Shown piece after piece: positions 1 through 33,035 of a stretch of DNA of 64,000 bases (position 1 is the first letter of the stretch; every line of letters begins with the position of its first letter). A program made the position numbers and the translations under genes. The stretch spans positions 48,422,001-48,486,000 of the forward strand of contig NW_026262679.1 of NCBI RefSeq assembly GCF_021869535.1. The letters run 5' to 3'. Source of the DNA: Mytilus californianus (taxonomy: Eukaryota). The notes beneath the pieces are model-generated. The model was not told the DNA's origin, made no database searches, and worked only from the letters and a program-made list of their open reading frames with translations.

Positions 1-2339
1 CTTATTATGCGATATGAGTTTTGCTAACTGTTTGAGAATGTACTGTGACCTATAGTAGCTATCTTTTACGTCATTTGGTCTTTTGTTCAGAGTTGTCTCA
101 TTTGGAAAAATTTCACATCTTCTTAATTTTATTTTAACTCATCAAAACAGTTCTAAGCACAAAACAACTAACTAACGACAAAACATTCAAAGGACTTACA
201 TGTATTAAAGATTACTTAATTAACTGATACCTAGTTCAAAGCCCTAAAGTATAACATTAACTTATAGACCTTGTTCTCCAATAACTTAAAAAGCTAACCG
301 TATACCAACGGATTTTTTTGTATAAAAGAAACACATGGCATTGTCCACTGCTCGTATAAAAGTATCGTCAAGATACAGGACCGTCAGTTTCATCGCCCCA
401 GCGTTAAATTTTTGTCTGCTGTATAATGAGCGAATATTTTATAATTTCAATTTAGTGACAGAAACGGTGAGTTTCCATCTTTTCAATTACAGAAGGAGCT
501 AAAAGCAGATATATTTCAATCAAATTTTTGAAAAACCATTTAATCAGATAAGAAATGTTCTGTTTAATAAGTTTGTGCGGTAGTGGAGCGTGCAGTCGTC
601 AATCCATACCTGTTAAAAGAAGTAAAATAACACAAAATGCGGAAATGTTTCTTCAGTAATGCTCAAGATCAACATATTTGAAATCCAAAAATAAATGCTA
701 ACGCAAGTCGTATCAAATCAAAAAGGACCTAAAATATAGCCAAATCTGTACACTTCAGTTTATAGCACGCAATGAATTTAAAATATTCAAAACGATTTTT
801 AACTTTAAAAAAAAATGTTATTTTCGTATATGTAGTTAGAAATCAACAAAATGAAGGGATAGAAAGATTTTTCTGAAGGTAACACTTGCTGGAAGGCGAG
901 ATGAAACGAAAGACGTTAGTAGGCAATACATAGTATGGCCCTATACAATTTCTGTGGAGTCCTTGAGCTAATGTAACGGTAAAATTGTTTATTAATTAAC
1001 TATTCATAGAACATACAGACTTGAATATAAAACAATTGTTATTCCATTCATCAGTACGTTTGTGTAGTATTTTCATCATATCGCTACAACACAGTTGGCT
1101 GCTTTGTTGGTCATTTAGAGTGCCTATGAAGTGTATTACTAATCCAAGGAGTGGAAGTATTATCAAGCCTTTAGAAATAAGTCAATTATTTTTAAACGTG
1201 ATGGGGAAATATCTACAATAATCGTACATTTATTGAAATGGGAATAAAAGGATTTCTTTTTTATTTGATTTTTCATGCTCAAACCGTATTTTAAATAGGT
1301 CCAATTTATTTTCGATGCTGGACCATATTTTGATGTTTTTTAAGAACGTTTATAAGCTCACGGTCTTGAACGATGATATGGTATTTTTTAATAGTATGGG
1401 TATAAAGTTTCTTATTCAAACTTCGATGTTTCAAAGTCCCCAATTCATTGTAAATATTTTTATATACTAATACTGATATCTGATGTAATTCATAAAATAG
1501 AAAATAAACAAAACAAAGAGTAATAGATATGCTTTATATATTTGATACGTACCAAGTCAAGAATATGACAGTTGTTATCCATTCGTTTGATGTGTTTGAT
1601 CTTTTGATTTTGCCATTTGATTGGGGACTTTCCTTTTTGAATTTTCCTCGGAGTTCAGTATTTTTGTGATTTTCGAAGCGCTTAGTAAGATTTATCTACA
1701 TTAATAGAAAATTAATACTTTATAAATTAAGTCTATCCAAAGCGCTTGATTTTGGAACTAAAATAATTTTTTCTTGTTTTTAAAAGTATAATGGTTTTTA
1801 GACCCAACAATATAAGTTGGTAATCTTTGCTGTGTTCGAACAAAAACATAACAAGACCGCAGCTGTATCATAATGTAACTCTTCGCAATATTGAATTAAA
1901 TTGAATTTTTAAGTCTGTTGTGTTGTATGTCTTTGATGTATGTTTAAACAGTTTTGGTTGCTGGTTCCCATTTACTGTCATGTAAACTAATTATGTCTGT
2001 TTGGGTTGCTCACGCAATTTTGTCAATACAACGGAACTATGAATAACTGTTATGCAAGTGGGAGTTTAAGCTAGCTATAAAAGTCATTTTCCTGTACCAA
2101 GTCAGGAATACGACAGTGGTTTTCCATTCGTTCTGTTGGTTGATATAGTCGATCGTTTGATTTTGTCCGGTTGTAATTGTTCCCCCTTTATAAATTTACC
2201 TTGAAGATCGGTATTGTTTATAATACCTTTTTATGTATATGGGCATGTTGCGGAGAAATTTTGTGAACTATAAGACACAAAACTTAAAATTTTACAATTA
2301 ACAATTGATGACTAAAATTAGCATAGACCCATCGAAACA

Positions 2340-4341
2340 ACATCTGATACAAAAATTTAATAACATTTTTAGATATTTGGATGATATATTGGCTCTCAAT
2401 AATGACGACTTCAGTTTGTACACTAAAAATATTTATCTTTCTGAATCGACTTTAAATAAAACTAATAGAAGTGGGACATTTAAAGACGTATCGTATCCGT
2501 ATCTGATACGTTGACGTATCTGCATGTATTATATTTACATACTTGCTTCTTGTATGTCAAAATTCTGTCTTAATCACATTTATTGCCCTTAAAGTGATGT
2601 ATCTACGATATATATTTACAGTACCTATAATACAATTATAAAAACATTACATGGACGACACCAGAAGCTAACATTTACACACATTTAACAATCACGTGAT
2701 TTTCGTGTCAATCTGTATACTTGTATAAATTTTAGCACTCGATATTTGAATCATTAGAACTACCCAGGCGTGAAGTTCAATTACAAAATAAATAAAGTTA
2801 AGGATTGTGTACCCTTGGTTGTTTCAATGCTAAACATATGGACATTTTATAGAAATCCACAGCCTTTCACCTTGTCCTCAGGCTCTTATATTTGACAATT
2901 CGGTGCGTGTTATATAGAGGATTATTACATATCGTGCTAGCAATGGTTTTCTTTAAACAAGTTTATCAATAAAGATATTGGTTAAAACAAATAAAAGTAT
3001 GGACCAATTCAAGTACACCTCCTGTAGGGTGCGCTCGACTTTAGTGACTCAGCACGATGAGTTTTGGAATATAAAGGTTGTTTATGATTTTTTGTTAAAA
3101 ACAAACGCTAGCACATCATGGACAAACAAGTAAGTAATCTACGTTTATAATTTTATAACGAAAATCTCTGTATTGAAGTCTGTAGGTTTTCTGCAAAAAT
3201 CTTTGCTTTATTTGCTACAAAATCACTATTTTCTATAAAATACAATAAAACATAGATAATATTTCTTTGAATCAATTTCCTATTGGTATATGTACGAAAT
3301 GACAGATCTCTTTTATTCGTTATCTTCGCTGTTTTGCTATTATTTCATCTTATACATTTCGTACTACACAGGACTACAGAAGCGGTTATAAACCGTACGT
3401 GAACAATATTTATACACATACTTTATTGCTTGTAAATGAGGATTGTGTCGGATTTATTACTTATACCAATAATAATAAATTTGTAAATTGGCAGGCAATA
3501 CTTTTTTTCCCAAATATTTAAACTGAAAGAGACCGAAAAAATCTGCATCACCCTTTCCTTATATTTCCCCGCTTTTCCCTATTCTCGAAATCTCTACCAC
3601 GATTTTGACTCGATCATTAACTACATTTGCATTATTATTAAAATTCACGCCTGAAAATGATGACGGTTTAAATATCTTTTGTTTAGATATATACGATTAT
3701 TCATAAATTAAAAACTATCATGTCATAAAAAGAGTGTATTAATGACCGAAAGATATCTAACATAGAAAAAACACATATACATGTACTATTTAAACACGTA
3801 AATGATCATTTAAACAATAACCCATAGATACGTTCAGATACGTCAACGTATCAGATACGGATACGATACGTCTTTAAATGTCCCACTTCTAATACTAACA
3901 ATGAACACTGCCCTTTCCTGGATCTTGATATCTATATCTTTAACGGGAAGCAACTTGTTCGATAAGCTCGTGTATGTACCAACGTATTTCATTTAAACGA
4001 AAGAAACCTCTGTATTACTGAAAATTTATTACACCAGGGTTTCCGACATCACAAACTAGTCAAAACATTTACAAAATTTTATCATCGGTACAAGGACATC
4101 ATTCGTAAATATAAATCAATATGCAAACATCTTATACGTTCAGGTATTTCACATCCAATCTTTTATGGTTATATTCTATGCAAAGCACAAAAATGTCGAC
4201 ATTCACCTCAAAAGCTAAACAAAAATTTAAACAGACTTATTCAGAAGGTATATAGTTACGATACTGTTGTCAGGTCATTAAAGATGGCATATTTTGGTAT
4301 TAATATTGATTCCCTCATAGGATCCTTGCATCGGAAATAAA
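2340..4341 (+). pseudogene. Penelope-like retroelement RT C-terminal fragment, split by a TIR element at 2466-3891
   Basis: 2340-2465 reads FRYLDDILALNNDDF...LNKTN. After the insertion, 3892 onward continues TNNEHCPFLDLDIYI...QLVR*ARVC...LLHQGFRHHKLVKTFTKFYHRY...SLHRK*. Same motif series as the RT at 6035-6625. Internal deletion and a stop present. Confidence 0.75.
2466..3891. mobile_element. Non-autonomous DNA transposon with perfect 57-bp terminal inverted repeats
   Basis: 2466-2522 TAGAAGTGGGACATTTAAAGACGTATCGTATCCGTATCTGATACGTTGACGTATCTG is the exact reverse complement of 3835-3891. Removing the element restores the host RT text. TSD is AAT or TAATA depending on where the ends are placed. 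No transposase ORF in the track. Confidence 0.85.
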
Positions 4342-6029
4342 CACATTTATTCTAAAACCAGTTGTTGGCATAATACGGGTTATGTTCTTCTCATATGTTT
4401 TATGACGGTATGATACTAAACCCCTAACGGGAGGGATTGTGCTTGATTTTCATATGATGAAGACATTATTTTTCAATCAGTTTAAATTATGTCTGGAGCT
4501 GGCATGTCAGTAACTGCTGGTAGTCCTTTGTTAATTAAGGTATCCTTGTCATTTTTCTTAGTTTCTTTTGTTACCTATTCGGACTTAGACTTCTTTTAAA
4601 CTGAGTTTTACTGTGCGTATTGCTGTTTGTTTGTTTTTTTCTATATTCAGCTGAGGCCCGCCTCCGAATGCGGGATTTTCTCGCTGTGTTGAAGACACAT
4701 TGGTGACCTTCATCTGTTTTCTGGTCTTTGGTCGGGTTGTTGTCTCTTTGACACATTCCCGATTTCCATTCTCAATTTTATCAGTATCAAAATCAGGTAA
4801 AGAGTGATAAACAAACTTCTATCTTTTGTTATATTCTTATTCAACAAATGCATTTCATCGGTATTAAAGTTATGATACGAAACGATAAATATTTAACACT
4901 TTACCTGTAGAAACAACGCATTAATAGTGTTCACGTAATCTATTTTTTTTGTGTGTTTAAAAAAATTGTCGGGTCCAGAGAAATAAAGGATACCTCTTAA
5001 CACAGGGCACATGATAACAGCAATCTTTTTCTAAACGTCCGTCGCTCTATGTTTGAACACGAAATACTTGAGTATTTCAATTGTTTGAACTCAACATTTA
5101 TATCTAACGTTTAAAGCAAAGAGTAATTTGACATTCTGCTGTCTACAGACAAATGCCAGTGACTGGGAACGTCCTCTTAAGGGTTATAAGAAGAACTTTA
5201 TTTTACTGCCAACATCATGACTTGGTTTGTATTTATAGAATAAATGTTCCATATGTCAGCAACAATTCTTTCCACCTCTCTTCGTCTATGAATTATCATC
5301 AACCATTCATTCGCGAAGCACAAGTGGTGCAACAACCTGAAAAAAATTCTGAACGCATTAGACTCACCCCCGTTTTTTGGTGGATTTCTTACTTGTATAT
5401 AAAATCTTAAGATTCTGTAAAGTGGTTGGTTTTAGTGTCATTTTGTTTGTCGTTCATGTTATTTTTTTTTTTGTTGTGTATTCTTCACTATATTTTAAGT
5501 TTGTCTTTTTGTTTCCTTAGTTATTGTCTTTTCTTATTTATATTCCGTGTAGGTATTTTTTTCAAACTTAACCGAAAAGAATGAAAAAGAGACGTCGGTA
5601 ACGAGTCAATGAGACAGCATTCCAACGACGCAAAAATGCAACCTATGATATTCAAAAATAGACAGACCTTTTTACATGTGAAGCTCTAAATCGCCCAGAG
5701 TATCAAAAATCTGCCATCAACACAAAATTAAAAAATGATACAAACAGAAAGATATGTGAAATTGCAAGAACAGAGATGTTTCTTAAAAGGGACAGGAGCA
5801 TGACAAATACCTAAATTAATTTTCCGAGACCTGAACCCGATCCGTTTTCATCTCAGTCTTTAGAACTACAAAAGGAAAAACACAAAAATCAATATCAGAA
5901 AAAAATTGTACACATGTACTTCCAAACTTGTGGTCCAGCCAGGCTTGTATTCAACACGTTATTTTTTTACAGTTTTAACTGTATTTTACCAAGTTTAACT
6001 TTTACATTAAGATCAGACTCGAAGTTTAA

Positions 6030-6625
6030 ACTGTATGGACTTTTTAATCGACAATATATTTGTTGAGTTTCGAGGATTGGTATTTCAACAGACAGTCGGT
6101 ATTCCAATAGGTACTAATTGTGCAGCCCTTCTGGTCGATTTATTTTTGTACTCGTATGAAGCAGAATTCATTCGAATCCTTCTAAAAGACAAAAAGAAAA
6201 AGTACCTTGCGAAATTCTTTAATTTTACTCTCAGATATATTGATGATGTCCTATCACTGAATAACCAATATTTCAGTCAGTACTTGCATCTCATATATCC
6301 CAGTGAAGTTGAAATTAATGATACTACTGATACTAGAAGGACTGCTTCTAAATTTGATCTTTTCCTCAATATTGACATAGATGAGCGTCTTCACACTAAA
6401 ATCCATGACTAACGGGATGATTTCAACATCCTAATTATTAATTTCCCATTTCTCAGCAGTAACATACCCTCTGCTCCGTCGTATGGTTTTTACATATCTC
6501 AATTGATACGTTATGCTCGTGTATGTTCACACTATACGGACATCATATACAGGAGTGTGGTGCTTACGCAGAAACTGCTCCAACAGAGTTATGAGGAGGG
6601 AAGATTAAAAAAGACACTCCGTTAT
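6030..6625 (+). pseudogene. Penelope-like retroelement reverse transcriptase fragment (probably Naiad-type)
   Basis: ORF 6035-6412 has FQQTVGIPIGTNCAALLVDLFLYSYE and RYIDDVLSLNN (RT motifs). Past an in-frame TAA it continues RDDFN..INFPFLSSNIPSAPSYGFYISQLIRYARVCS. Truncated at both ends. Clade assignment is inference. Confidence 0.85.
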
Positions 6626-8667
6626 TTGTTGCCATTTTAGCGATATTTTTTAACATTGCCATATAAGCGGGAGGTTTGGCCAAGCATAAAACCAGGATCA
6701 ACCCACCATTTTTTTCTTAAAATGTCCTGTAACAAGTCAAGAATATGGCAGTTGTTATCAAAAAGTCCGTGTCTGTGTATATTGGCGTTTGTTTTTGTTG
6801 CAGTTCAGTATTTCTGTTGTTCCGTTGTTTTCCTCTTATAGTTTATGTGTTTCCCTCGGTTTTAGTTTGTAACCCGGATTTGTTTTCTCTTAATCGATTT
6901 ATGTCGTTTGAACAGCGGTATACTACTGTTACTTTTATTAGTGATGGTAAAGTACAGATTAAATTGTGTTAACGTATGGTTAAAATCACTTACAATGTGT
7001 CTTGTACAGTTAAATGCTGTTTGAAGTCAGGAATATGACAGTTGTTTTCCATTCGATTGATGTGTTTGAGCTTTTAATTTTGCCATTTCATAAAGGACTT
7101 TCTGTTTTGAATTTTCCTTGAAGTTCCGTTTTTTTTTTTTTTTTTTTTACTTTTTGATACAGTTAATGCAGTTTAGTGAAGTGTGTACACAAGTTAAAAC
7201 AGATTTTTTAGAATTGAAAATTTAGTTTAGCTAAATATATGTTCAATTCTATAGAGATTTCATGGTTAACAGATCAATTTGGATTGTTTACGATTGTGAC
7301 TGTTTTGGTTTCATTTGTCTGTTTGCATTGGACTTAGTGGGTATAGTATACTAGTTTTTCATTTAGATATAAAAATAAGAAAATGTGGTATGATTGCCAA
7401 TGAGACAACTCTCCGCCAGAGACCAAATGACGTTATATCTAACAACTATATGTCACCGTACAGCCTTCAACAATGAGCAAAACTCATACCGCATAGTAAG
7501 TTTAAAAGGCCTCGAGATGACAAATGTAAATCAAATCAAATTAGAAAACTAACGGCCTGGCTTTTGTACAAAGCATATGTCTGTATGAGTTAATGTGTAA
7601 GATATATGTCTAACTATGGTCAACAATCAATCAATGTCGTGTTAAATCAAACAAGACTATTCCTATTGGAACATGCCATGAAAATTATACGCTTGTATTT
7701 TTTTAGCTTTACACTTTTTTGTTTTCCATGGAGTTTTGTTGATGGTTGGCCTTAGTTAAAATCATCTGAACATTTAACTCATTAAAATAATTTATAAAAA
7801 GTAAAATAACAAAAATACCGAACTCCAATCGACATTCAAAGCGGAAAGTCCTTTATCAAATGGCAAAGTCAATTATATTGACAACAAGGTGTGAGCAAAA
7901 CAAACAGACATAAAAGATAAAAATGTCAAAAATTGGAGTACAGCAGTCAACATTGTGTTATAATCTTAATCACTATAAAACAAACAACTATGTGAACAAT
8001 GATAAAACAAAATGGCATTTAGACACTCTATAGACAAAGCACATAAGCAAAAATGAAAGACAAGAACACAAAAAATGATCATAGCACAATAACACAATGG
8101 TGGGATGTATAAATACCGAGCCACGCCAAAAGGATATTACAAAAAATGGACTAAACAGTTAAGGTTAAAAATATACAAAGACAAATAAAAAGAATACTAT
8201 AACACGTAATTAAGATGATTAACAACGTCAGTGGTTCAGAAAAATTGATACCGTTTATGTTATTCCTAGAATCTATACTTCAAGACCATCATGTATTATT
8301 TGTGACGTTGATACGGAATAATTTTACAACAAGGTCTTGGTATCTTCCGATGAACTTTTTAAGAAAAGGTACAAGACGTTCTTTGACACAACCCTGGTTC
8401 ATCAACTTCCTGCTCAGACACTGGTTGCGTAATCAATTGTTATAACATTTAGGAATACAAGAGTCTTGTGATTTTGATGAGAGTATATGTTTTATTTGAA
8501 AATATTACAAACAACCTTTAGAAATTATTGTTCTTAATCTATCACTTAGTAATATGTAAACTATGAAATTCAAAGCATATCCTATTAGTAAACCAATGTC
8601 TTTGAAATTTACTATTATACTGAACCATTCGTTAGAGTTTGCAAAGTCTGGAAACATAGCAAACTGT

Positions 8668-9474
8668 TCATAAAGGATCGTTTGAATGAATTAGAAATAC
8701 GATACAGATTATTAAAATAACTATAGCTGATCTCTTATTCTTTTTACGAATGGCCAATGATTCTGATGTAGCAACAATTTTCTTGAAACAAGTCAGTTTG
8801 CAGCTTATGAAAGTTGTACAGAAAACTACTAATGCCATTAAGGTCAGGTTTACTAGGTACATCAACTGAGAGGTGGCTAGTTGGATGTCACGTGGTAATT
8901 CTTCAGAACAACACATTCCATTGAGTTCATGCAAGATACTGCATTTGTCCACCAAAGTAGGACAGAATATGACAATTGATGAGACGGCTATTACAGCAGA
9001 TGATACAACAGAAAACTTTATATTAATAGAACGTTTTGTCCAAAATGGAAATGAAATTGACACAGCCTTGTGCAAGGAAAGTACTGTCGTGAAAAGTACT
9101 GACATCAAATTAAATGCAAATGAGTTTGTCCTAATAATAGTGTATGTCACACATGACGGATACCACCAATACCACATTAAAACTCCAGCAGGATGTTGCA
9201 CGGGCTTATAAAGTCCTAATACATGCAGTGAAACTGTTGAGATTGAAGTTAAAAGATCGGACAAAGCCAACCCGGACAACCAAACTGTAATTGGTGACAT
9301 ATTTTCTTTTTTCAGGAATATGACAACTACTAAGGTGTTTACCAATAAGATTTCCACAGCTATAGCACATTCAGCATATACTATTTCTTTCTTTGGCATA
9401 TAAGACCATTCATTATAACATTCAAAATCTAACCTTGCTGTACAGTTAATACCATTTAGGTGTAATACCACCAT
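8668..9474 (-). CDS. 7TM half of GPCR copy A (TM1-TM6), using an ATG supplied by the inserted element
   Basis: Part of ORF 8668-9516. The first ATG (9474, MVVLHL) lies inside the transposon end. The ORF stops prematurely at 8668 because of the TM6 frameshift. Expression unknown. Confidence 0.4.
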   Translation of the reverse strand: MVVLHLNGINCTARLDFECYNEWSYMPKKEIVYAECAIAVEILLVNTLVVVIFLKKENMSPITVWLSGLALSDLLTSISTVSLHVLGLYKPVQHPAGVLMWYWWYPSCVTYTIIRTNSFAFNLMSVLFTTVLSLHKAVSISFPFWTKRSINIKFSVVSSAVIAVSSIVIFCPTLVDKCSILHELNGMCCSEELPRDIQLATSQLMYLVNLTLMALVVFCTTFISCKLTCFKKIVATSESLAIRKKNKRSAIVILIICIVFLIHSNDPL

Positions 9475-11291
9475 TGATTTTCCCCTATTAGTCTTTGTTA
9501 AATTTGCACTTTTCAAAAAATTGTGCAGAATTTATCTTTGTTTCAAATAAAGAAATACTTGGCATGAGTAAAGTTTTATCCTGTCCAGTACTATAGAAAA
9601 AATTTCACATAACATTTCATTGCATATAAGAAAATAACCATCACTGGAAGTTAACCAATCAAATTTTCCCCCTTTTTTAACCTGTGTACAAGCTTTAGTA
9701 ACCATGTAACCTCAAGTTTCCAAAATATTCTATAGAAACCCCAAATAAAGAAATAATGGTGCTTTGAAATACCCAAGATATATGTTTATGACTCAGAAAT
9801 GTTTTACTGCAATGAAATGTAGGATCAATTACCTACAACTGTCAAATTCAAGGGAATATTTTTTTTCGACCTATTTTCGTATGCAACCGGATGTGACGTA
9901 CTATGATTTGGTGGTATTACACCTAAAGAAGACTTTTTTGTTGAATAAACTGAATGTGACTTTTTTCCTTTGTAATACTGGTTATTTCAAGCATTCCTGT
10001 CAAGTTTTGTCATAATCAGTTCAATAGTTGGAGAAAAATCTAGTATAATGTAAGACGACATCTACAGCGATTCGAGCAAAATTTCTTCGAAAAATTCAAA
10101 CCAAGCCGCATCATGATAGAATATAGTGTGGACCAATAAATGATCAAATATTTATCTCATCTGCCTACAAACAGTTGAATATGATACAAAAGATGACTTT
10201 AGGATGATAAATACTACTAATGGACCTCTTATTCTTCCTTATAAAGTCTCTTTTGGTCCATTTATACCTCTCATTTCCTCAAAATTTCTACTTTTTAGGC
10301 CAATAAATAAAAATTTTGGGGTAACTTTCACTCATTTATGATAGGAATGTTATTATAAATGATTAATTGAAGTATTCAAGCTGCTTGAACTATCCGTATA
10401 AAAGTTTACTGTCTCCAAGGAGGTTTCAATAAGTCCTTGCCTAAAACTTAAATTTACGCCGCGTTCCAGAGAGGGACATAAAAAACTTCTCTTTTGGTGA
10501 ATAATTTGTTGTTACTGCTTTAAAAATAATTTCATTTACTTAAAACTATATATTTATTAAAGTATTTCTTAGGAAAAAATTTCTAGTATAGCAGAATATA
10601 AGAAATAAGGAGAAAAAGCTCCCCAAGACTCTAAGTATGGCTTGTTCTGTCAACTAATATTCATGGTTAAGTCCTATTTCAAGGAAATTTTCTCATAAAA
10701 TGTATTTTGGAGACTCAATCCACTCAGAATATTTCATTATTTGTAATATTTCACTTAAATAGCAAGAAATTTTAACACATGAGAGTACTCACAAGGTCAA
10801 AGGTGCATTTACAGCTTTCCATATTAGGTGTAATACCACCATTGATTTTCCCCTATTAGTCTTTGTTAAATTTGCACTTTTCAAAAAATTGTGCAGAATT
10901 TATCTTTGTTTCAAATAAAGAAATACTTGGCATGAGTAAAGTTTTATCCTGTCCAGTACTATAGAAAAAATTTCACATAACATTTCATTGCATATAAGAA
11001 AATAACCATCACTGGAAGTTAACCAATCAAATTTTCCCCCTTTTTTAACCTGTGTACAAGCTTTAGTAACCATGTAACCTCAAGTTTCCAAAATATTCTA
11101 TAGAAACCCCAAATAAAGAAATAATGGTGCTTTGAAATACCCAAGATATATGTTTATGACTCAGAAATGTTTTACTGCAATGAAATGTAGGATCAATTAC
11201 CTACAACTGTCAAATTCAAGGGAATATTTTTTTTCGACCTATTTTCGTATGCAACCGGATGTGACGTACTATGATTTGGTGGTATTACACC
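9459..11291. mobile_element. Composite DNA transposon: two 465-bp long terminal direct repeats around a 903-bp internal region (KolobokP-like, non-autonomous)
   Basis: 9459-9923 and 10827-11291 appear identical. Each is bounded by a 15-bp TIR, GGTGTAATACCACCA/TGGTGGTATTACACC. TTTA is duplicated only at the outer ends (9455-9458, 11292-11295). The paralogous site at ~32300-32340 is empty. Confidence 0.85.
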
Positions 11292-12052
11292 TTTAATAGT
11301 TCGCTTATTTTTGAAACGCTTAGTAAGATTGTATGGTTAGTTAGTTTACCTATGTGACTCAAGAACTCATTTGTGCAAACCTGGGCAGAGAACTTGACAT
11401 TTAAGATTTTAGCATCGACTTTATCATAAGCATGTAACATGTACAATGAACCGTTTCCAAACTCACTGACATGACCATGTGATGTAAATTGAAAGTTGTT
11501 TTCATTCGTGAGTCTTAAAAATCGTTGACAGTTAGAATACTCCATAAGAAATGCGTTCAACTGAGATTGTGTCAACAATGGTTCGATGTCATAGAGATTT
11601 GAAAACGACGCCATACATTTTGAATCTATGAAATATATATTTGAATAACTAAGTAGTTCCAATCTTAATTCATGAATAGCCTTATTTTCAAATCTTAAAT
11701 TGTTTGGAATTAAAGGACAAATCAGTGTACTGTTTTCACAAGTTGGTGACTTCAGCATTTTAACCATTTTTGTTTTTGTTATTTCGTGAAATTGCTTGCC
11801 AGTCTTCACATAATTCCACAGTAATTTTACACACTTCGGTTGTACTAATTCAAGAACGAATGACGAATAATCGTCATAATCAATCACTCGAAACATGCTA
11901 GGAAATGGCCCACTAATTGACGTGATTCTAAACCTTTTCCATTCAGATGTATCCAGTTCTTCAATGGTCGTACAGTTTGACTCATCTCTCAAAACAAACG
12001 AATATGTGAATTTCAAAACACATAGAAACAAAATATTCGTTATACGAACCAT
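11285..12052 (-). CDS. N-terminal (signal peptide plus ectodomain) half of GPCR copy A, 255 aa, terminated inside the transposon TIR
   Basis: Open ORF from ATG 12052 with a hydrophobic N-terminus (MVRITNILFLCVLKFTYSFVL), several Cys and N-glycosylation sequons (NCT, NST, NGS, NHT). The stop TAA (11285-11287) is in the TIR. Confidence 0.55.
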   Translation of the reverse strand: MVRITNILFLCVLKFTYSFVLRDESNCTTIEELDTSEWKRFRITSISGPFPSMFRVIDYDDYSSFVLELVQPKCVKLLWNYVKTGKQFHEITKTKMVKMLKSPTCENSTLICPLIPNNLRFENKAIHELRLELLSYSNIYFIDSKCMASFSNLYDIEPLLTQSQLNAFLMEYSNCQRFLRLTNENNFQFTSHGHVSEFGNGSLYMLHAYDKVDAKILNVKFSAQVCTNEFLSHIGKLTNHTILLSVSKISELLKV

Positions 12053-14639
12053 GATTTGTCCTGCTGTTTAGGCAATGTTACGGTGATTTTTTCTATTTTT
12101 CAAAGTAATACACTTATACCGAATTAGATGCATTTGATAATTAATAATCAGCAAAGTATTGTATTTCAATATTGATTGTGTTAAAACATAAATCATTGGA
12201 GACATATAAAAATTCAAATGTCATTTATGACATCACAAAATGGTAATGTCATTAAAAAAAGATTGTATCGTTATTCTAATACCATAACTGATGATAGAAA
12301 TCAAATGATCAGAAAATTGTAATAACATTTAAAATCCAACAACAGCAAAAATTAATTTTTTTAATAATACTAAGCTAATATCTTTGACAATTTTTTTCTG
12401 ACAAAATAAATTATACATGCCGCATAAAACATAATATAATTTTTCATGTAACGTATTTATTGAGAAGTCAAATATTTTAAACTTTGCACATTTTAAAAAG
12501 TAGAAAGAAAAGTTGCATGGACTAAAACTACTGTACAATACCATTAAGCACTCGCTTATCATCCTTTGCTTTACATTCGTGGTTTTCAAATGGTCAAGAT
12601 TTGGGCCTACCTGGTGAAGGAAAATCTAGAAAATCCCTTCGGAACGAACGACATTGATAAAGTGTTATTTTCATTTCCTACATGTGTATGTACATATAAA
12701 ACACTCATCATGCGACTAAATATAAAATGATAGTTTATTTTCAAATAATACAGAATAAGTAACTTCAAATAAAAGACATAACCGTTTTTAAAATCATAAA
12801 ACTTCATGCAACAATCTACCTAACAAAACGTATGTTAAAAAATTCTATTTTGTTTGTAAAAATTTTGAACAGCAACCATTCTTTCTTTCGTCTACATAAT
12901 TTTCAGCATGCAACCGTAGAATAAGTGTAGACAAACATGTTACTGGTAAACGTATGAAAAGGAAAACGAAATAGATAAATAGATGTGTTGTGTTTCTGTA
13001 TATTTGGTTATAACTTTTAAATATGAGTCGTTTTCTTTTGGTAACATATTAGATGAATACAAAGTAGTAGCATTCAATTTATATTATTTAGTTTAGATAA
13101 TATTTTTTTAGATTTTTACTAAGTCATTGATAATTTTTCTAATCCATTTTTTATCAAATTTGGTGAAGTTTTCAGAGTCTTAAATTTTTATATTTGATTT
13201 CATTTTGTATACTTATAAATTTATTTTTTTACTTTGCAGTTTCGTGTATGTACAAATGTGTGTATATTTTGTAACATGTAAAGCGCTTAGAGTAACTGAT
13301 ATGGAACGCCACAGCTGTCTTATGTGGAACTCTGATATTACTTTATGTTGTTTTATTATTACTTGATGATATTTTGTCTTTACTTAATATGGTTTTGACA
13401 TTACGTTATGATGTTTTGATATAACTCAATATGGAATTATCGTTACTTAATGATATTTCGAGATTACACGATATGGTTTCGTATTGACTTGATATAGTTT
13501 TGTCATTACTCAATATGGTTTTGTCATTACTCGATGTGGTTTCGCCATTATTTAATGTGGTTGTGTCATTAGTCAATGTGGTTTTAACATTACTTGATGT
13601 GAATGTGACTTAACGTTATGTAGTTGTTTCATTACATGATGTGGTTTTGTTATTTTGTAATGATGATTTGCCTATTCTTTATATGGTTTTAACATTACGC
13701 AATGATGTTTCAAAATTTGACGATTTTACACTACATGATGTGTTTGTTTCATTATTTGATGTGGTCCTGTCATTCTTTGATGTGGTTATCCCATTACTTG
13801 ATGAGGTAAAATCACGTGACCAATTCGGAAAAACCTGTTCTATTTTTAGATAGATTTCCATGTTGTATGTGCCTTGGATGAGTGTGGCCATCCATCGAAT
13901 TAGAGTTCAAATTAAAGTTCGGGTTACTGTTTGAGTTAAACTTTGAGTTAGTCTTCGATTTCGAATTCAAGTCATTATTGGAATTAAAGTTTTAGTTAGC
14001 ATTGAGTTTCGAGTTGGACTTCGAGTTTGAGTCACATTTAAAGGTAGAGTTCTAGTTACTACATTAAATTTGAGTCACTTTTGAGGTAGAGTTTGAGTAT
14101 GATTCGAATTTAAGTCTTATTTAGATTAATTAAGATTTTGAGTTGAAATTCGAGCTATCTTATATGAGTTCGTATTTAAATTTTCTATCGCGGAACAAGG
14201 ACTTTTGCTCGGGCTTCCGAAAAGAGGGCTCCGGGGTATGCGTACAAAAGATAAACAATGTTACAGAATACAAAACGCAACATAGAAGTTGAAATAAAGT
14301 TAGATGTGGTGTGATTGACAATGAGACAACTGTCCACCAGAGTTTAAATGCAGTGGATGTAAGAAATCATATATAGGCAACCGTACAGCCTTCAACACAC
14401 CGTATAGTCAGCCACAAAAGGCCATCATGCACCATGTGAAAAAATTCAAACGAAAAAACAAACGGTTTTATTTATAAATAAACAATCTACAAAAAAATAA
14501 AACACACATTTATACAACGACAACAATTGAACTTCATGCTCCTGACTTGGGGCAGGTAAATAAAGAAAGTGCACGTGGCGGAGTTTAACATGTATGTGAG
14601 CGCTACATCCTAACCTTACATCGGACTCAACTCATTTAA

Positions 14640-14890
14640 CCGCTTATACCCCAAATTGACAAAACAAAAGTTCGATTATCTCCCAAAAGAGCAAAAGATA
14701 ATAAAAATAAAAACCCTGACCACATGCACACCTTCAATATATGTACAAACAGACAGTAAAGAGAAAACTTCCTAGGATTCAAACTGTAGGAGGAGTTATG
14801 CGGAATACCTATATACCCATAATGGGACGGACAGACGGACGGACAGGGGTAAAACAATATGCCCCAAACTTTCATTTGCGGTAACATACA
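14640..14890 (+). mobile_element. pearl/CvA/MgE-like (Helentron-associated) non-autonomous element fragment
   Basis: GGACGGACAGACGGACGGACAG microsatellite core followed by GGGGTAAAACAATATGCCCC, an arrangement typical of bivalve pearl-like elements (recognised from memory). Confidence 0.5.
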
Positions 14891-15624
14891 AAACAGTTTC
14901 ATTTGGCTGATTCAATAGATCGGTATGACTGGGTAATATAAATCCATCGAGGTGATCTCGGATGCTCCAGAAAGGCACCCGTCGTGTTATTCGAGAAAGT
15001 ACAAACCCAGTGATTTGGTTTTATTTGGTTGTTTACATTCAAGGAAAAGATGATGGTATTATGGTTACGACCACTGGAACATGTCCGTCGTCACATGTGA
15101 AACAGATATTCCAAAAGTTTATTTTTTTTCAATTAGTGCGAGGTAGATCAGGGAATTCAATTGATTACAAATAAAAGATTGATATTCGTATAAGTTCAAA
15201 TGATCATTTATGCTAAAAAAAAAATCGGAGAATTCATATTTTATAGTATTAATGCTTTGTCGCTTAGTCCGAGCCCCCCTCCCCCCGTTTCCTGTAACTT
15301 TAGTGTTAATTCATTTGAAGTGGTTCATTTGTTAACAATAAAGTTCAAGTCTTTTGATTTGTGTCGAGGCTGCGACATCAATGTAGCGGCAGTGAGACAC
15401 AACAAACCTATATTTCGTCGTCGATAGTGGCGTCGGCGTCTCCATCTCCATTTTCTTTATTTCTATTGAGTTTAACCTTTCATTATACATGTTACTAAAC
15501 ATGTATGCCATCATAATTTTGTACTTTTAGAATATCATACTGTATTTGTTTACCTTGACTATTGTATCTGTATTTATATTGTATGTTTCTCTGTAAACTT
15601 GTATTTAGTTTTTAGAGAATAAAG

Positions 15625-15647
15625 TATCTATCTATCTATCTATCTAT
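15625..15647 (+). repeat. (TATC)n microsatellite
   Basis: tatctatctatctatctatctat. Confidence 0.9.
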
Positions 15648-16841
15648 AGATCGTTAGGTTTCTAGTTTTTTACATTTTTCATTTCGGGACCTTTTATAGC
15701 TTACTATAGGGTATGGGTTTTGCTCATTGTTGAAAACCATACAGTTTTGTTTTAGTTAAATAAAACCGAATTAAACTGTTTTGACATGATAAATTTGTAA
15801 ACCTCCATGAAGTGTTTTAAAACTTGTATAGGAGTTATTCCTCAATTTCAAGAAAAAGCATCTACAGAAAAACATTTTTTTAAAGTTTTTTTTTACCGAT
15901 AAATGTATAGATAAATGTACAGCCGATCAACATGACGCTTTTACACTTACAGCAGCAATATCACGCGAGACACAGGTTTACGTGGAATATTTTACAAATT
16001 TATTACAAAAATACTGCTTCCGTTTGAGAACTTAGGATAAAAACAACAGGACCAAGTGGTTTGGGGATATCCCAATTATGTCCGAAATACTGTAAACTTT
16101 TTAATACTTTTTTTCTTATTATTGTCTGCCGTTCCCCTTTTTCATACCAAATAACTCTGAACAACCACTCGAACTTTAATTTGAACTTTAACTCAATGGA
16201 TAGCGATACCCATCCAAAGCACATTAAACAAACGATATATTGAAATCTGTTTAAAAATAGAACATATTTTTTTCCGAATTGGCCACGTGGTTTTACCTCA
16301 TCAAGTAATGGGATAACCACATCAAAGAATGACAGGACCACATCAAATAATGAAACAAAAACATCATGTAGTGTAAAATCGTCAAATTTTGAAACATCAT
16401 TGCGTAATGTTAAAACCATATAAAGAATAGGCAAATCATCATTACGAAATAACAAAACCACATCATGTAATGAAACAACTACATAACGTAAAGTCACATT
16501 CACATCAAGTAATGTTAAAACCACATTGACTAATGACACAACCACATTAAATAATGGTGAAACCACATCGAGTAATGACAAAACCATATTGAGTAATGAC
16601 AAAACTATATCAAGTCAATACGAAACCATATCGTGTAATATCGAAATATCATTAATTAATGACTATTCCATATTGAGTTATATCAAAACATCATTACGTA
16701 ATGTTAAAACCATATTAAGTAAAGACAAAATATCATCAAGTAATAATAAAACAACATAAAATAATATCAGAGTTCCACATAAGACAGCTTCGGCGTTCCA
16801 TAAATTGTATTTCTGTAAAATGTGCTTTAAAAAATGCCTTG

Positions 16842-16898
16842 TAATAATAATAATAATAATAATAATATGAATGATGATAATAATAATAATAATAATAA
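16842..16898 (+). repeat. (AAT)n microsatellite, interrupted
   Basis: taataataa... run with a short ATG-type interruption. Confidence 0.9.
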
Positions 16899-16915
16899 AA
16901 AGAGTCCAACAATAG

Positions 16916-17272
16916 AAACATACTGCCCTTGGATGAAGGTGTTAGGGTAGATTAACACACGAGGGAAAACATTATCATCCAAGACAAATTCGCAGTTGAT
17001 AATTTTTTCAACGAATTTGTTCACTGTTTATCATCACCACCGTATATAGGTCCCTTTGGCCTGGTTCTCTGTTCGTTGTCTAAGTAAAACTACATTACTG
17101 TACATATACCAACAAATAGGTACCCAGGTATCTATACGCTAGTATTTTATACAGTTATGTTGTTTTTCTTATACAATGAACAAAGAACCAGGACAAGGGT
17201 ACCTATATCCGGTGTTATTGATACACAGAGGTGTTAATCACCCTTGCACCTTCATCCAAGGGCAGTATGTTT
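16916..17272. mobile_element. MITE, ~350 bp
   Basis: 26-bp TIR AAACATACTGCCCTTGGATGAAGGTG (16916-16941) and its reverse complement (17247-17272), plus an internal inverted pair at ~17038-17073 and ~17178-17213. Confidence 0.7.
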
Positions 17273-23569: not shown

Positions 23570-25165
23570 AATATATATATATATATATATATGTTCGTTA
23601 TTTTCAAGGGAAGTCAGAGAGCCAGATGGTTCAATTTTACAGGCGAATCAATTCCAAGCAAGTTCGTTTTTTGAAATCAATGTTGCCAATCTGGATAGTA
23701 TTCTTTAAAAAAATTCTACTACGAATTAGATGGGCTCATTCGATGTGGTTTGTCCGCATGGTCTGTTATGAAGATCAAAACTGTATGGGATTTAAAACCA
23801 GAGTTGGTAGTAAAATTACATATAGAATATACGTCTAGTTTTGGAACGTCCGACGTACTTCATGGTAGAACAGGGATGTTTTATAAAGTTTGATATCAAG
23901 AGGGATACCTCTCAGTTTTCCCTGACAGTATTTGTGATTGTCCGGATATTGTCGAAATTAATTTCTCTTACAATTATATAGAGTCAATAATAGTATCCAT
24001 TGTTTATTCAAACTTGAAATTTAATATTGAAAGGAAACACAATGAAAATGATAACAAACGATATTTTTACCAATTTAACAATTTTGCGTCATGTTGATTT
24101 GCCAAATGATCAAATAAGCCATATCGATGCAGGATCACTAGGGCTTCCACCAAATAGCAGTCTGTTTGATATTAATCTTAGTTTTAACTATTTAAAAGTT
24201 ATACATGTCTCAACCTTTGGTATCAGATGGTTTTTATAATAGAATTGATCTATCTAACAACAAACTGTCAAAAATTACAAATATAAAGGGCTGGAACGGA
24301 TATAATATCGGTAATCGTACTGGTGGTAGTAACATTGGTTTTTCGAATAACGAATTCACCCACTTCTCAATGTATCAAAAGTTGAATTTTCAGGTGAATA
24401 TACTGTAAAACGATTTGCTTATTCGTATATAGCGTGTTTAGGAAACAATAATTGGACTTGTGATTGTAATCTTTGGAACGAGTATTTAACTCATTTGCGT
24501 AAAGGATTTGACTATCAAACTTCTGCAGTAAGTTTGTACAGTATTCCATGTTCAAATCCTCCTGAATTACGCCAATATGTAGTTATCGACTTTCAGACGA
24601 ATAAAACAAATGAACTTTAGCATCTTTTAATATGCAATATTACTTGTGCACATAATTGCACCTGTTTTCACCAAACTTCAAAAACAGAACGGTCATCGAT
24701 TGTTCGGGTCTAGCATTAAAAGCTATGCCAGATAATAAGCCATATTTCAATAATTTAGAAATAGATCTAAGTATGAATGATCTTTCTAAGTTAGACGGAA
24801 AAGGTTATTTATACCGAGTTACAAAATTGAATGTTTCAAATAACCATATTACATCGATATTGCCGATTATTTATAAAGTACTGAATCTAAATCTGATCGA
24901 TTTTCGCGGGAACAGTTTAGATACACTCAGTAATAACGTTCGCTTAAAATATCCATGCTCACTTTTACTCGGCCATTTGACCATAAGATGTACTTGTGAA
25001 CTGCAATGGCTACCTTCTTGGCTTGAACAACAAAAGCTGCCAAATTGTATGTTCAATAGAATTGTATGCATCAGCAACAACAAAGACGCAAGTAGTATGT
25101 CACATAGTAAATTTTGCATCCAGGACAGAACAAAACATATTTTAAGAAAAAAATTAACAGTTTGA
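23570..25165 (+). pseudogene. Toll-like receptor/LRR ectodomain pseudogene (multiple-cysteine-cluster architecture)
   Basis: Across frames: LRRs (IVEINFSYNYI, LRHVDLPNDQISHI, LFDINLSFNYL, IDLSNNKLSKI), LRRCT GNNNWTCDCNL...CSNPPELR at 24441, LRRNT CAHNCTCFHQ...TVIDCSGLAL, more LRRs (IDLSMNDLSKL, LNVSNNHITSI, IDFRGNSLDTL), second LRRCT CTCELQWLPSWL. Several stops and frameshifts. No TM or TIR domain seen. Start uncertain. Confidence 0.8.
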
Positions 25166-30225: not shown

Positions 30226-31184
30226 TATATATATATATATATATATATATATTCATGCATTGTTCCAATAATTTCTTTAACATTTTAATGACCGAAAAAT
30301 CGTTATATACGACTGTAACCTCTGGAAGTTTTAAATAAATTACATGCTTTTGGTGATCCTTTCAAGTCGTTTGACAATTATAACTGTTCGACTCTCTACA
30401 CAAAACAAAAAGAAGAAGTTTTCTTAAAATAAGATGGTAATTGAAAATTAGATTGCAAATAAATGTCCTTTCCCCGGTCATTTAGTAAGCAACGATAAAA
30501 TAAACATTGATCAAACAAAACAGAAGAAAGGTTCTATAAGCTTTGTCTTTTTTCCTGTATCTAAAGCTCTCACACATATATTTTGCGACAGCGCTGCAGA
30601 TACCAAACAGTAAAGTCTTAACACGTTTGGGTTAAACAAGAATAAAATTGGATTATCTCTCGTTTATTAGGAAAGTATTACATGTATTGATAAATAATTC
30701 GAATATCGTCATGTACATGCCCTCTGATATTTAATCTATTTAACTAATGTCTACGCTATGTCGATTGTCCGGACGCTTCTAATAAGGTTAATCGTTCAGA
30801 GTATTAAAAATCTGCCATAAACACAAAATGAAAAAATGAAAACAAAAACAGAAAGATATGTGAAATGGCAAGCACTGGGGTGTTCCTTAAAAGGGACAAG
30901 AGCATGTGAAAGGTCCAAATTTATTTTCTTAGACCTTAACGCAATCTTTTTTCATCTCAGTCTTTAGAATTACAAAAGGTACTAAAAACATACAAATCAA
31001 TATCAGAGAAGTTTGTACAAATGTAAATCGAAACTTTTTTCTCTTGTCAGACCTTACGGTCCAGCCATGTCTGTTATCTGAACATTTAACTCATTAAAAT
31101 AATTAAAAATCAATTGTTATTACATTTAGGAATACAAGAGTTTTGTGATTTCGGTGATATTAAATGTTTTATTTGAAAATATAA

Positions 31185-33035
31185 CAAACATTACAACAGC
31201 CTTAAGAAAGTAGTGTTCATCCTATAAGTAAACTAATGTCTTTAAAATTTATTTATATACTGAACCATTCGTAAGAGTTTGCGAAGTCTGGAAACATAGC
31301 AAACTTTACATAAAAGATCGTTTGAATGAATTTTGACATAGTAGCAACTATAATGATCTCTTATTCTTTTTACGAATGGCCAATGATTCTGTTGTAGCAA
31401 CAATTTTCTTGAAACAAGTCAGTTTGCAGCATATGAAAGTTCTACAGAAAACCACTATTGCCATTAAGATAAGGTTTACTAGGTACATAATCTGAGAGGT
31501 GGCTAGTTGGATGTCACGTGGTAATTCTTCAAAACAAAAAATACCATTGAGTTCATGCAAGATACTGCATTTGTCCATCAAACTAGGACAGAATATGAAA
31601 ATTGATGAGACGGTTATTACGGCAGATGATACAACAGAAACCTTTATAATAATAGAACGTTTTGTCCAAAATAGAAATAAAATTGCCACAGCATTGTGCG
31701 GGGGTCTCATTGGGGGGTTCTGATCCCGGATCCCGCTTACTGTTTTGTCAGATTCCCGTATCCCGCTTACACTATGTACGTCAGCAATTCTCATTTTTTT
31801 GTAATTTCCCGTGTCCCGCTAGACTTCATTTCCCGTTTTCACGGCACAATAATTTGACTTTCACGTGTCACGCTACAAAAAATCGGCAATCCCGGGTCAC
31901 GCTTATACCCCAATGAGACCCACTTGTGCAAGCAAAGTACTGTTGTGAAAAGTACTGACATCAAATGAAATGCAAATGAGTTTGTCATAATAATAGTGTA
32001 TGTCACACATGACGGATACCACTAATACCACATTAACACTCCAGCAGGATGTTGCATGGGCTTGCAACGTTCTAATACATCCAGTGAAACTGTTTAGATT
32101 GAAGTTAAAAGATCGGACAAAGCCAACCCGGACAACCAAACTGTAATTGTTGACATATTTTCTTTTTTCAGGAATATGACAAATACTATGGTGTTTACCC
32201 ATAAGATTTCCACAGCTATAGCAGATTCAAAATATACTATTTCTTCCTTTGGCATATAAGACCATTCATGATAACATTAAATATCTAACCTTGCTGTATC
32301 GTTAATATCATTTAATATTTTACCGATTTTTGAAACGCTTAGAAAGATTGTATGGTTAGTTAGTTTTCTCAAGAATTCATTTGTGCAAACCTGACATTCA
32401 GGATTTTGGTATCAACCATATCAGAAGCATAGAACCATGTATAACGAACGGTTGTTATTACCATTTCCATGTTCACTTACATAACCATGTGATGTGAAAT
32501 GAAAGTCTTAAAAATCGTTGAAAGGTATACTCTATAAGAAATGCGTACAACTCAGATTGTGTCAGCAATGGTTCGATGTCATAGAGATTTGAAAACGACG
32601 CCATACATTTTGAATATATGAAATATATATTTGAATAATTAAATTGTTCCATTTTAAATTCATGAATCGGCTTATCTTCAAATCTTATTTTTTGGGGAAT
32701 TAAGGGACACATCCGTGTACTGGTTTTACAAGTTGGTGTCCTAAGCATTTTTGTGTTTTGCTCTTTCATAAAACCACTCGCCAGTCTCCGCATAATTCCA
32801 CAGTAATTTTACACACTTCGGTTCGATTGATTCAAGAAAGAAAGAAGAATAATTATCATAATCAATTACTCGAAACATGCTAGGGAGTGGCCCACCAATA
32901 GACGTGATTCGTAACCTTTTCCCCTTTAGATGTGTCCAATTCCCCAACGGTCGTACAGTTTGACAATTTTCTCCAAGCATACGAATGACTGAATTTTACA
33001 AAACGTTAAAGTAAGATATTCGTTGTACGAACCAT
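31185..33035 (-). pseudogene. GPCR paralog (copy B), multiply disrupted
   Basis: ATG at 33035 (MVRTTNILL*) stops after 9 codons. Fragments RLRITSIGGPLPSMFRVIDYD, CMASFSNLYDIEPLLTQS and FWTKRSIIIKVSVVSSAVI...RKKNKRS align to copy A. Frameshifts, deletions and a MITE at 31700-31923. Confidence 0.85.
31700..31923. mobile_element. MITE inserted in GPCR copy B
   Basis: TIR GGGGGTCTCATTGGGG...CCCCAATGAGACCCAC, TTGTGC on both sides. Copy A has the empty site (AGCCTTGTGCAAGG, ~9065). Confidence 0.85.

What the first reader, a model, noticed from the sequence alone, without database searches (positions are those of the whole stretch)
8505..12052. Hidden single-ORF class A GPCR with an unrecognised ~280-aa ectodomain
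Seen: the 255-aa ORF and the 282-aa 7TM ORF become one reading frame (…SKISELL|NGINCTARLDFEC…) once the transposon is removed, and copy B shows the same junction uninterrupted (~32290-32340). The reconstructed protein is about 570-590 aa. Established: large ectodomains on class A receptors are mainly known as LRR (LGR type) or LDLa+LRR (GRL101 type). This one shows no obvious LRR or LDLa motif and sits on a peptide-receptor-like 7TM with HKA in place of DRY. Inference: a possibly uncharacterised, lineage-expanded receptor family. A gene predictor would split or miss it.
Basis: partly seen in the sequence, partly recalled or inferred. Interest (0 to 1): 0.75.

Follow-up and report, generated by a model that had tools for sequence, protein, structure and literature searches.

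The report
Broken mussel receptor with orphan outer domain
This is a recently disabled copy (jumping-gene insertion plus a small deletion) of a mussel cell-surface receptor gene. It belongs to a roughly 50-gene family, found so far only in Mytilus, whose large outer domain matches no known protein family or fold.

Summary
Removing an 1833-bp composite transposon (9459-11291, 4-bp target duplication) joins the 255-aa ORF and the 7TM ORF in frame. Copy B and the Mytilus coruscus orthologue both have this junction uninterrupted. That orthologue, CAC5369690.1, is an annotated single-exon protein of 578 aa, 89-92% identical to the window pieces.

An 8-nt deletion in TM6 puts TM7 in another frame. 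Copy B is broken into at least six frame pieces. No intact copy of this subfamily was found elsewhere in the genome.

- About 50 loci in this 1.65-Gb genome (probably M. californianus) carry the same ~250-aa cysteine-containing outer domain fused to a divergent rhodopsin-type 7TM. The 7TM has H/Q-K-x for DRY and NFxxY for NPxxY.
- At least 28 of these loci have open frames over 500 aa.
- An exhaustive profile search of 1.84 billion proteins found only 24 clusters, and every named one is Mytilus.
- The outer domain has no Pfam, PDB-sequence or fold match, and it is under purifying selection (dN/dS 0.3-0.4).

The family is not hidden: intact members are already annotated as uncharacterised proteins. 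This scan flagged probable relatives with Tyr-rich repeats on other DNA (s1-302511, s1-342881). Function remains inferred.

The parts
11296..12052 (-). Copy A, 5' part: start codon, signal-peptide-like N-terminus and ectodomain codons 1 to about 252. No internal stop.
   Evidence: ORF. 89% identical to P0016 residues 1-253. Contains 4 N-glycosylation sequons and 8 Cys.
11292..11295 (.). Target-site duplication, upstream copy relative to the gene (TTTA on +, TAAA on -).
   Evidence: The M. coruscus empty site has a single TAAA.
9459..11291 (.). 1833-bp composite TIR transposon. Two 100%-identical ~465-bp units (9459-9923 and 10827-11291), each ending in GGTGTAATACCACC / GGTGGTATTACACC, flank a 901-bp core. 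It supplies the stop of the 255-aa ORF and the TTG 'start' of the 282-aa ORF.
   Evidence: Absent from the orthologous site in M. coruscus (L070) and in L071. An 83%-identical unit lies elsewhere in L070.
9455..9458 (.). Target-site duplication, downstream copy relative to the gene.
8691..9454 (-). Copy A, middle part: the conserved membrane-proximal NC...C linker and TM1 to TM6, including HKA in place of DRY.
   Evidence: 92% identical to P0016 residues 253-508. Weak Pfam Srx hit only.
8668..8692 (-). Site of the 8-nt deletion in TM6 (removes the codons matching M-S-E of the orthologue), followed by the out-of-frame tail and the stop of the 282-aa ORF.
   Evidence: DNA alignment with M. coruscus and copy B. 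Protein alignment.
8505..8690 (-). Copy A, 3' part in a different frame: end of TM6, ECL3, TM7 (NFIVY in place of NPxxY), short tail and stop.
   Evidence: Translation. 88% identical to P0016 residues 511-570.
31172..33035 (-). Copy B: an older, heavily decayed paralogue. It has the same architecture and an uninterrupted ectodomain/7TM junction at about 32300, but sits in six frame pieces with a ~200-nt insert at 31699-31904.

Best explanation
What the locus is. Copy A (8505-12052, minus strand) is a recently inactivated pseudogene of a single-exon receptor of about 578 aa. The receptor is the positional orthologue of Mytilus coruscus CAC5369690.1.

How it was disabled. Two derived lesions did it. 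One is the insertion of an 1833-bp composite TIR transposon, with a 4-bp target duplication, exactly between the ectodomain and its conserved membrane-proximal linker. The other is an 8-nt deletion in TM6. Copy B, 21 kb away, is an older and more decayed duplicate.

The gene family. The parent gene belongs to a family of about 50 loci, seen so far only in Mytilus. Each member has a signal peptide, or upstream exons carrying a signal peptide plus Tyr/Thr/Ser-rich repeats. This is followed by a ~250-aa glycosylated, cysteine-containing alpha/beta ectodomain with no recognisable relative. Next comes a conserved Cys-bracketed strand (N-C-x-x-V/L-x-F/Y-x-C) about 15 residues before TM1. The last part is a divergent rhodopsin-type 7TM that keeps N1.50, D2.50, the TM3 Cys and Y7.53, but has H/Q-K-x for DRY, NFxxY for NPxxY and no CWxP.

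Inferred mechanism (not shown). In intact members the ectodomain captures an extracellular ligand, most likely an environmental, conspecific or microbial cue as for other lineage-specific class A expansions. The conserved linker then relays binding to the 7TM bundle. The window copy itself makes no functional receptor.
For: Junction and orthology:
- P0016 aligns to both window pieces at 89-92% identity and is continuous across the junction.
- The M. coruscus locus L070 is collinear with window 1-19000 at 88-92% nucleotide identity and shows the empty site.
- The P0016 coding sequence is one 1737-nt exon.
- A third-species intact 581-aa orthologue, L071, also lacks the insert.

Lesions:
- Insert anatomy.
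- 8-nt deletion.
- Copy B frame pieces.

Recency of inactivation:
- The two transposon units are 100% identical.
- There are no stops within the pieces.
- dN/dS against the orthologue is 0.42-0.60 at dS of about 0.08.

Family:
- The ectodomain profile finds 60 matches (about 50 loci) in the genome. At least 28 have open frames over 500 aa with the ectodomain directly upstream of the 7TM.
- Only 24 clusters were found among 1.84 billion representative proteins, and all named ones are Mytilus.
- Older paralogue pairs give dN/dS of 0.31-0.43 for the ectodomain and 0.42-0.57 for the 7TM.

Class A affinity:
- PF00001 scores 35.6 bits against a cutoff of 30.5 for paralogue L005.
- The family profile hits only class A receptors in the PDB (best E 5e-7).
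- Conserved positions are listed.

Orphan ectodomain:
- No Pfam match.
- No PDB sequence match.
Against: - The mechanism is inferred from architecture only. There are no expression, ligand or coupling data.
- K for R3.50 and the lack of CWxP and of the Pro in NPxxY leave G-protein coupling uncertain.
- The window's own 7TM piece and its orthologue P0016 do not reach any Pfam threshold.
- The ectodomain model is only moderately confident (pLDDT 71, pTM 0.71), so a known fold could have been missed.
- One unnamed transcript-size contig (P0026, SRR26215654) is at most 31% identical to every copy in this genome, so restriction to Mytilus is not proven.
- The insertion and deletion come from a single assembly and could be a haplotype-specific allele.
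Confidence: 0.8

Rival explanations
1. The locus is still functional in the species. On this view the transposon insertion and the 8-nt deletion are a haplotype-specific (presence/absence) allele or an assembly artefact, and an intact allele is common in the population.
For: - The pieces carry no stop codons.
- dN/dS against the orthologue is still 0.4-0.6.
- The two transposon units are 100% identical, which implies a very recent insertion.
- Intact orthologues exist in two other species.
Against: Two independent lesions lie on the same haplotype. The neighbouring duplicate is also dead. No other close copy exists in the assembly. The assembly is long-read based according to PMC9710001, so an 1.8-kb artefact with a perfect target duplication is unlikely.
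Confidence: 0.25
2. The insert is removed as an intron, so a full-length receptor mRNA is still made from copy A.
For: The insert starts with AAG|GTGTAA on the coding strand, which resembles a 5' splice site.
Against: Reading by eye, I found no in-frame AG acceptor at or near the insert's 3' end. The nearest AGs give a stop within a few codons. The 8-nt deletion in TM6 still destroys TM7.
Confidence: 0.03
3. The ectodomain is a strongly diverged member of a known fold (for example a PH-like or another small beta-sheet-plus-helix module) rather than a new domain. The searches missed it because the model is mediocre and the two subdomains were not searched separately.
For: - Mean pLDDT is only 71, with a disordered loop at 116-135.
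- The search tool itself warns that weak or missing matches do not show that a fold is new.
Confidence: 0.3
4. Intact family members are not classical G-protein-coupled signal transducers. They would instead be decoy, scavenger or adhesion-type surface proteins, or arrestin-biased receptors that use the 7TM only as an anchor.
For: DRY is replaced by H/Q-K-x, NPxxY by NFxxY, and CWxP is absent, family-wide. From general knowledge, altered DRY motifs accompany loss of G-protein signalling in atypical chemokine receptors.
Against: K at 3.50 is invariant and conservative. N1.50, D2.50, N7.49 and Y7.53 are invariant or nearly so. The 7TM is under purifying selection, and a mere anchor would not need that.
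Confidence: 0.2

Closest known systems
Lineage-specific expansions of class A GPCRs in Lophotrochozoa (candidate chemoreceptors; Mol Biol Evol 2025, PMC11886862)
   Same: Divergent rhodopsin-type 7TM. Single coding exon. Tandem clusters (for example C24 at 16.96-17.2 Mb). Restricted to one genus, with many pseudogenes and fast evolution.
   Different: That paper describes the receptors through their 7TM pockets and loops. A text search of it found no mention of an ectodomain and only one passing mention of the N-terminus. These receptors carry a conserved ~250-aa folded ectodomain and lack DRY.
LGR / GRL101 / relaxin-type class A receptors (LRR or LDLa+LRR ectodomains)
   Same: A class A 7TM preceded by a large ligand-binding ectodomain and a conserved Cys-containing hinge before TM1.
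   Different: No LRR or LDLa match in any of 40 members. Genus-restricted instead of pan-metazoan. Single exon.
Mytilus coruscus CAC5369690.1 (UniRef A0A6J8AKR3), 'G-protein coupled receptors family 1 profile domain-containing protein'
   Same: Positional orthologue: 89-92% identical, with a collinear locus.
   Different: It is intact (578 aa, one exon), whereas the window copy carries the transposon and the 8-nt deletion.
Mussel GPCRs with a Tyr-rich repeat N-terminus (earlier scan findings s1-302511 and s1-342881; public examples VDI37654.1, CAG2227677.1, CAC5373082.1)
   Same: The three public proteins contain the same ectodomain profile and a 7TM.
   Different: They add a signal peptide and 190-255 aa of Tyr/Thr/Ser-rich tandem repeats upstream. 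The window subfamily has its own signal peptide in the same exon and no repeats. That the two earlier scan loci belong to this family is inferred from their descriptions, not tested by alignment.

Membership tests
Class A (rhodopsin-type) GPCR | Significant match of the 7TM region to the rhodopsin-family profile (Pfam PF00001) | tested here: inconclusive
   Paralogue L005 scores 35.6 bits against a cutoff of 30.5. Other members score 12.8-24.8 bits. The window piece and its orthologue P0016 have no hit. The family profile hits only class A receptors in the PDB, best E 5e-7, spanning TM1-TM7.
Class A (rhodopsin-type) GPCR | Conserved N1.50, D2.50 and the TM3 Cys paired with an ECL2 Cys | tested here: met
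   N293 and D319 are invariant. C354 and C434/C435 are nearly invariant (P0016 numbering) across 25 members.
Class A (rhodopsin-type) GPCR | D/E-R-Y at the end of TM3 | tested here: not met
   HKA in the window copy and P0016, and QKT or QKV in paralogues. The K is invariant.
Class A (rhodopsin-type) GPCR | NPxxY in TM7 and CWxP in TM6 | tested here: not met
   TM7 has N-F-x-x-Y, with N, F and Y invariant. TM6 has C-I-I-F with no Trp or Pro.
LGR / GRL101-type class A receptors | LRR and/or LDLa repeats in the ectodomain | tested here: not met
   No LRR or LDLa hit at E up to 1 in the window ORF, in P0016 or in any of 40 ectodomains.
Adhesion / class B GPCRs | GAIN/GPS or hormone-receptor domain before the 7TM, and a class B 7TM profile | tested here: not met
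   No such Pfam hits. The only 7TM similarity is to class A.
Lophotrochozoan lineage-specific class A expansion (candidate chemoreceptors) | Intron-poor genes in tandem clusters, restricted to a narrow lineage | tested here: met
   Single-exon coding sequences. Clusters on C24, C154, C132 and C57. Only Mytilus among named hits.
Lophotrochozoan lineage-specific class A expansion (candidate chemoreceptors) | Expression in chemosensory tissue, or response to external cues | not testable with these tools
TIR (cut-and-paste) DNA transposon, composite or non-autonomous | Terminal inverted repeats, a target-site duplication, and an empty orthologous site | tested here: met
   Perfect 16-nt TIRs. A 4-bp duplication and an empty site with a single TAAA in M. 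coruscus. Superfamily not determined.

The most novel reading that the evidence does not exclude
The ~250-aa ectodomain is a new protein fold that arose within mussels. It would serve as the ligand-binding module of a new kind of class A surface receptor for macromolecular environmental, conspecific or microbial cues. Subfamilies would be gained and lost rapidly, and this locus is a fresh loss.
Probability: 0.3. Interest if true: 0.65.

Novelty: new variant of a known kind. Interest (0 to 1): 0.45.

Why it matters
Class A GPCRs with large folded ectodomains are few and well catalogued (LRR and LDLa types). This is a genus-restricted family of about 50 genes with an outer domain that matches no known family or fold. 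It would be a tractable case of domain birth fused to a fast-evolving receptor scaffold. It is also a candidate for how mussels sense settlement, conspecific or microbial cues. The proteins already sit unannotated in public mussel proteomes, so defining the domain would improve annotation at once. The window locus adds a dated example of receptor loss by transposon insertion.

Tried and rejected
Searches on the ectodomain that found nothing:
- Pfam on the window ORFs, the orthologue and 40 ectodomains: no family.
- PDB sequence search with the ectodomain profile: only chance-level hits, E of 0.14 or weaker.
- PDB search with the single 7TM sequence: none.
- ESM Atlas by features: no usable hit.
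- Test for an internal repeat within the ectodomain: hhalign probability 0.2%.

Searches that added little:
- Word-index search with the full-length family alignment returned only 4 proteins.
- The same search with P0026 returned only P0026 itself.
- A DNA search of the genome with the transposon unit returned nothing, not even itself. That search skips very common words, so the result is uninformative.

Not completed:
The small tree I could build places copy A with P0016 and P0041 at 100% support. It cannot test whether receptors with the ectodomain form one clade.
- I did not build or search a joined or repaired copy A protein. The pieces were searched separately by reference, and the intact natural orthologue P0016 stood in for the joined model.
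- A splicing rescue of the insert was considered and rejected (see rivals).
Full report
**Context.** The window is G000:C99:48422001-48486000 of a 1.65-Gb, 175-contig genome with about 31% GC. The best outside matches are Mytilus proteins. The M. coruscus locus that holds the orthologue is collinear with window 1-19000 at 88-92% nucleotide identity, so this is a different Mytilus species. The size and scaffold number fit the M. californianus reference (1.65 Gb, 176 scaffolds; PMC9710001). That species assignment is an inference.

**Observation.** On the minus strand there is a 255-aa ORF (12052-11285) and a 282-aa ORF (9516-8668). Between them lies an 1833-bp insert (9459-11291). It is made of two 100%-identical units of about 465 bp, each ending in perfect inverted repeats (GGTGTAATACCACC...), around a 901-bp core. 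Only the outermost flanks carry a matching 4-bp duplication (TAAA on the coding strand), so the composite moved as one unit. Taking out the insert and one duplicate reads ...SKISELL|NGINCTARLDFEC... in one frame. The insert supplies the stop codon of the first ORF and the TTG 'start' of the second, which agrees with the scan's other note on this stretch (s1-307235).

**Independent confirmation.** The exhaustive profile search returned P0016. This is M. coruscus CAC5369690.1, 578 aa, annotated as 'G-protein coupled receptors family 1 profile domain-containing protein'.
- It is 89% identical to the first ORF over residues 1-253 and 92% identical to the second over 253-508, and it is continuous across the junction.
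- Its coding sequence is a single 1737-nt exon.
- The DNA alignment shows the empty site with one TAAA.
- A third intact orthologue (P0041, 581 aa, an unnamed Logan run) also lacks the insert.

The 282-aa ORF ends inside TM6, and TM7 (..GYALNFIVY..) lies in another frame at 8690-8505. Compared with both M. coruscus and copy B, copy A has lost 8 nt here, removing the codons that match M-S-E. In the family alignment the S and E are invariant. Copy B is worse: six frame pieces and a ~200-nt insert. Searching the whole genome with either half finds no other close copy. The next best hits are 26% identical in the ectodomain and 37% in the 7TM. This subfamily is therefore represented here only by two pseudogenes. 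Copy A's inactivation looks recent. The transposon units are identical, the pieces contain no stops, and dN/dS against the orthologue is 0.42-0.60 at dS of about 0.08.

The pieces were used separately by reference, and the natural orthologue P0016 stood in for the joined model.

**The family.** Distant paralogues on other contigs are intact single ORFs of about 510-630 aa with the same layout. One example is L005:334-2067:-, 578 aa.
- Iterated searching and an alignment of 20 N-terminal regions show one homologous domain of about 250 aa at about 20% pairwise identity. It has invariant or nearly invariant Cys at P0016 positions 105, 146, 175, 226, 258 and 266, plus a P-x-F-S and a D-x-x-C motif.
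- The most conserved stretch is a Cys-bracketed strand (N-C-x-x-V/L-x-F/Y-x-C) about 15 residues before TM1. The transposon landed just upstream of it.
- The ectodomain profile finds 60 matches (about 50 loci) in this genome. At least 28 lie in uninterrupted frames over 500 aa, always directly upstream of the 7TM. Tandem clusters occur on C24 (16.96-17.2, 19.0-19.5, 24.7 and 32.3-32.4 Mb), C154, C132, C57, C46 and C143.
- Older paralogue pairs (dS 0.4-1.1) give dN/dS of 0.31-0.43 for the ectodomain and 0.42-0.57 for the 7TM, so both parts are constrained.
- Some members (VDI37654.1, CAG2227677.1, CAC5373082.1) add a signal peptide and 190-255 aa of Tyr/Thr/Ser-rich tandem repeats upstream of the same domain. 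That design matches the scan's earlier findings s1-302511 and s1-342881 on other DNA of this genome. I did not align those two loci myself.
- The window subfamily has its own hydrophobic N-terminus in the same exon, and 4-6 N-glycosylation sequons.

**Distribution.** A profile search that read all 1.84 billion representative proteins found 24 clusters at E up to 1e-3. Every one that carries a name is from M. edulis, M. galloprovincialis or M. coruscus. One unnamed 595-aa protein (P0026, SRR26215654) has the full architecture. It is at most 31% identical to anything in this genome and has no close relative in the database. It may come from another taxon or from a subfamily that is absent here.

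**What the domains are.**
- 7TM. PF00001 passes its threshold in one paralogue (35.6 bits against 30.5) and falls short in the others. The window piece and P0016 have no hit. The family profile hits only class A receptors in the PDB (bradykinin B1/B2, rhodopsin, neurotensin; best E 5e-7; TM1-TM7). N1.50, D2.50, the TM3 Cys, N7.49 and Y7.53 are kept. DRY is H/Q-K-x, NPxxY is NFxxY, and CWxP is absent. The 7TM is thus a divergent rhodopsin-type bundle. 'Peptide-receptor-like' is only weakly founded.
- Ectodomain, sequence level. No Pfam family was found in 40 members, and there was no PDB sequence match.
- There is no internal repeat.
- The model is moderate and the subdomains were not folded separately, so 'no known fold found' is the correct wording, not 'new fold'.

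**Mechanism.** Shown: the architecture, its conservation and its constraint. Inferred: intact members are surface receptors whose glycosylated, disulfide-bonded ectodomain binds a ligand and passes the signal through the conserved linker to the 7TM. This would resemble ectodomain-bearing class A receptors functionally, without being related to them. The family's genomic behaviour (single exon, tandem arrays, many pseudogenes, genus restriction) matches the lineage-specific class A expansions proposed as chemoreceptors in Lophotrochozoa (PMC11886862). A text search of that paper found no mention of an ectodomain. G-protein coupling is uncertain given the altered DRY, CWxP and NPxxY motifs.

**Phylogeny.** A quick 7TM tree of 40 rows puts copy A with P0016 and P0041 in a fully supported, long-branched clade, among about ten deeply separated subfamilies. 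Rows left out were near-identical Logan variants and truncated models. Two 'ectodomain-less' database entries are simply truncated models of ectodomain-bearing subfamilies.

**Verdict.** It is wrong about the gene being a live 'hidden' receptor, because both window copies are pseudogenes. It also overstates how hidden the family is, since intact members are already annotated, though uncharacterised. I rate it a new variant of a known kind, of moderate interest.

Noticed in passing
window 9459-11291; L070:19786-20217: The composite transposon has two 100%-identical ~465-bp TIR units around a 901-bp core and a 4-bp TTTA duplication. An 83%-identical single unit lies about 8 kb from the orthologous gene in M. 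coruscus, so the unit is a mobile family shared across Mytilus species. Superfamily not determined.
   Followed up: partly
window 8692-9457 vs 31905-32315: Between copies A and B, the first ~390 nt after the junction (linker to about TM3) are 93% identical with no gaps, whereas the rest of the gene is 76-83% identical. This may be a gene-conversion tract between the two paralogues.
   Followed up: no
window 24656-25165 (+): A 169-aa ORF with weak leucine-rich-repeat matches (LRR_9 at 23.5 bits, below threshold) and an LRR C-terminal-cap-like Cys pattern lies between copies A and B. It is probably a fragment of an LRR receptor gene.
   Followed up: partly
P0007, P0029, P0012 (public Mytilus proteins): Some family members carry about 17 tandem copies of a 13-residue Tyr/Thr/Ser-rich unit (GVSSEQTTTYIDD-like) between the signal peptide and the orphan ectodomain. 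This suggests a mucin-like or sulfotyrosine stalk, and links this family to earlier scan findings s1-302511 and s1-342881.
   Followed up: partly
L039 (Logan SRR26215654 contig, 2376 nt): A 595-aa protein with the full ectodomain+7TM architecture is at most 31% identical to every copy in this genome and is a singleton in the protein database. Its source organism is unknown, and it could extend the family beyond Mytilus.
   Followed up: partly
G000 C132:112843976, C13:2125349, C132:119330255, C99:13211190 and others: Several more distant 7TM paralogues sit in open frames of 600-750 aa but were not hit by the ectodomain profile. They may carry other, unrelated N-terminal or C-terminal extensions.
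   Followed up: no
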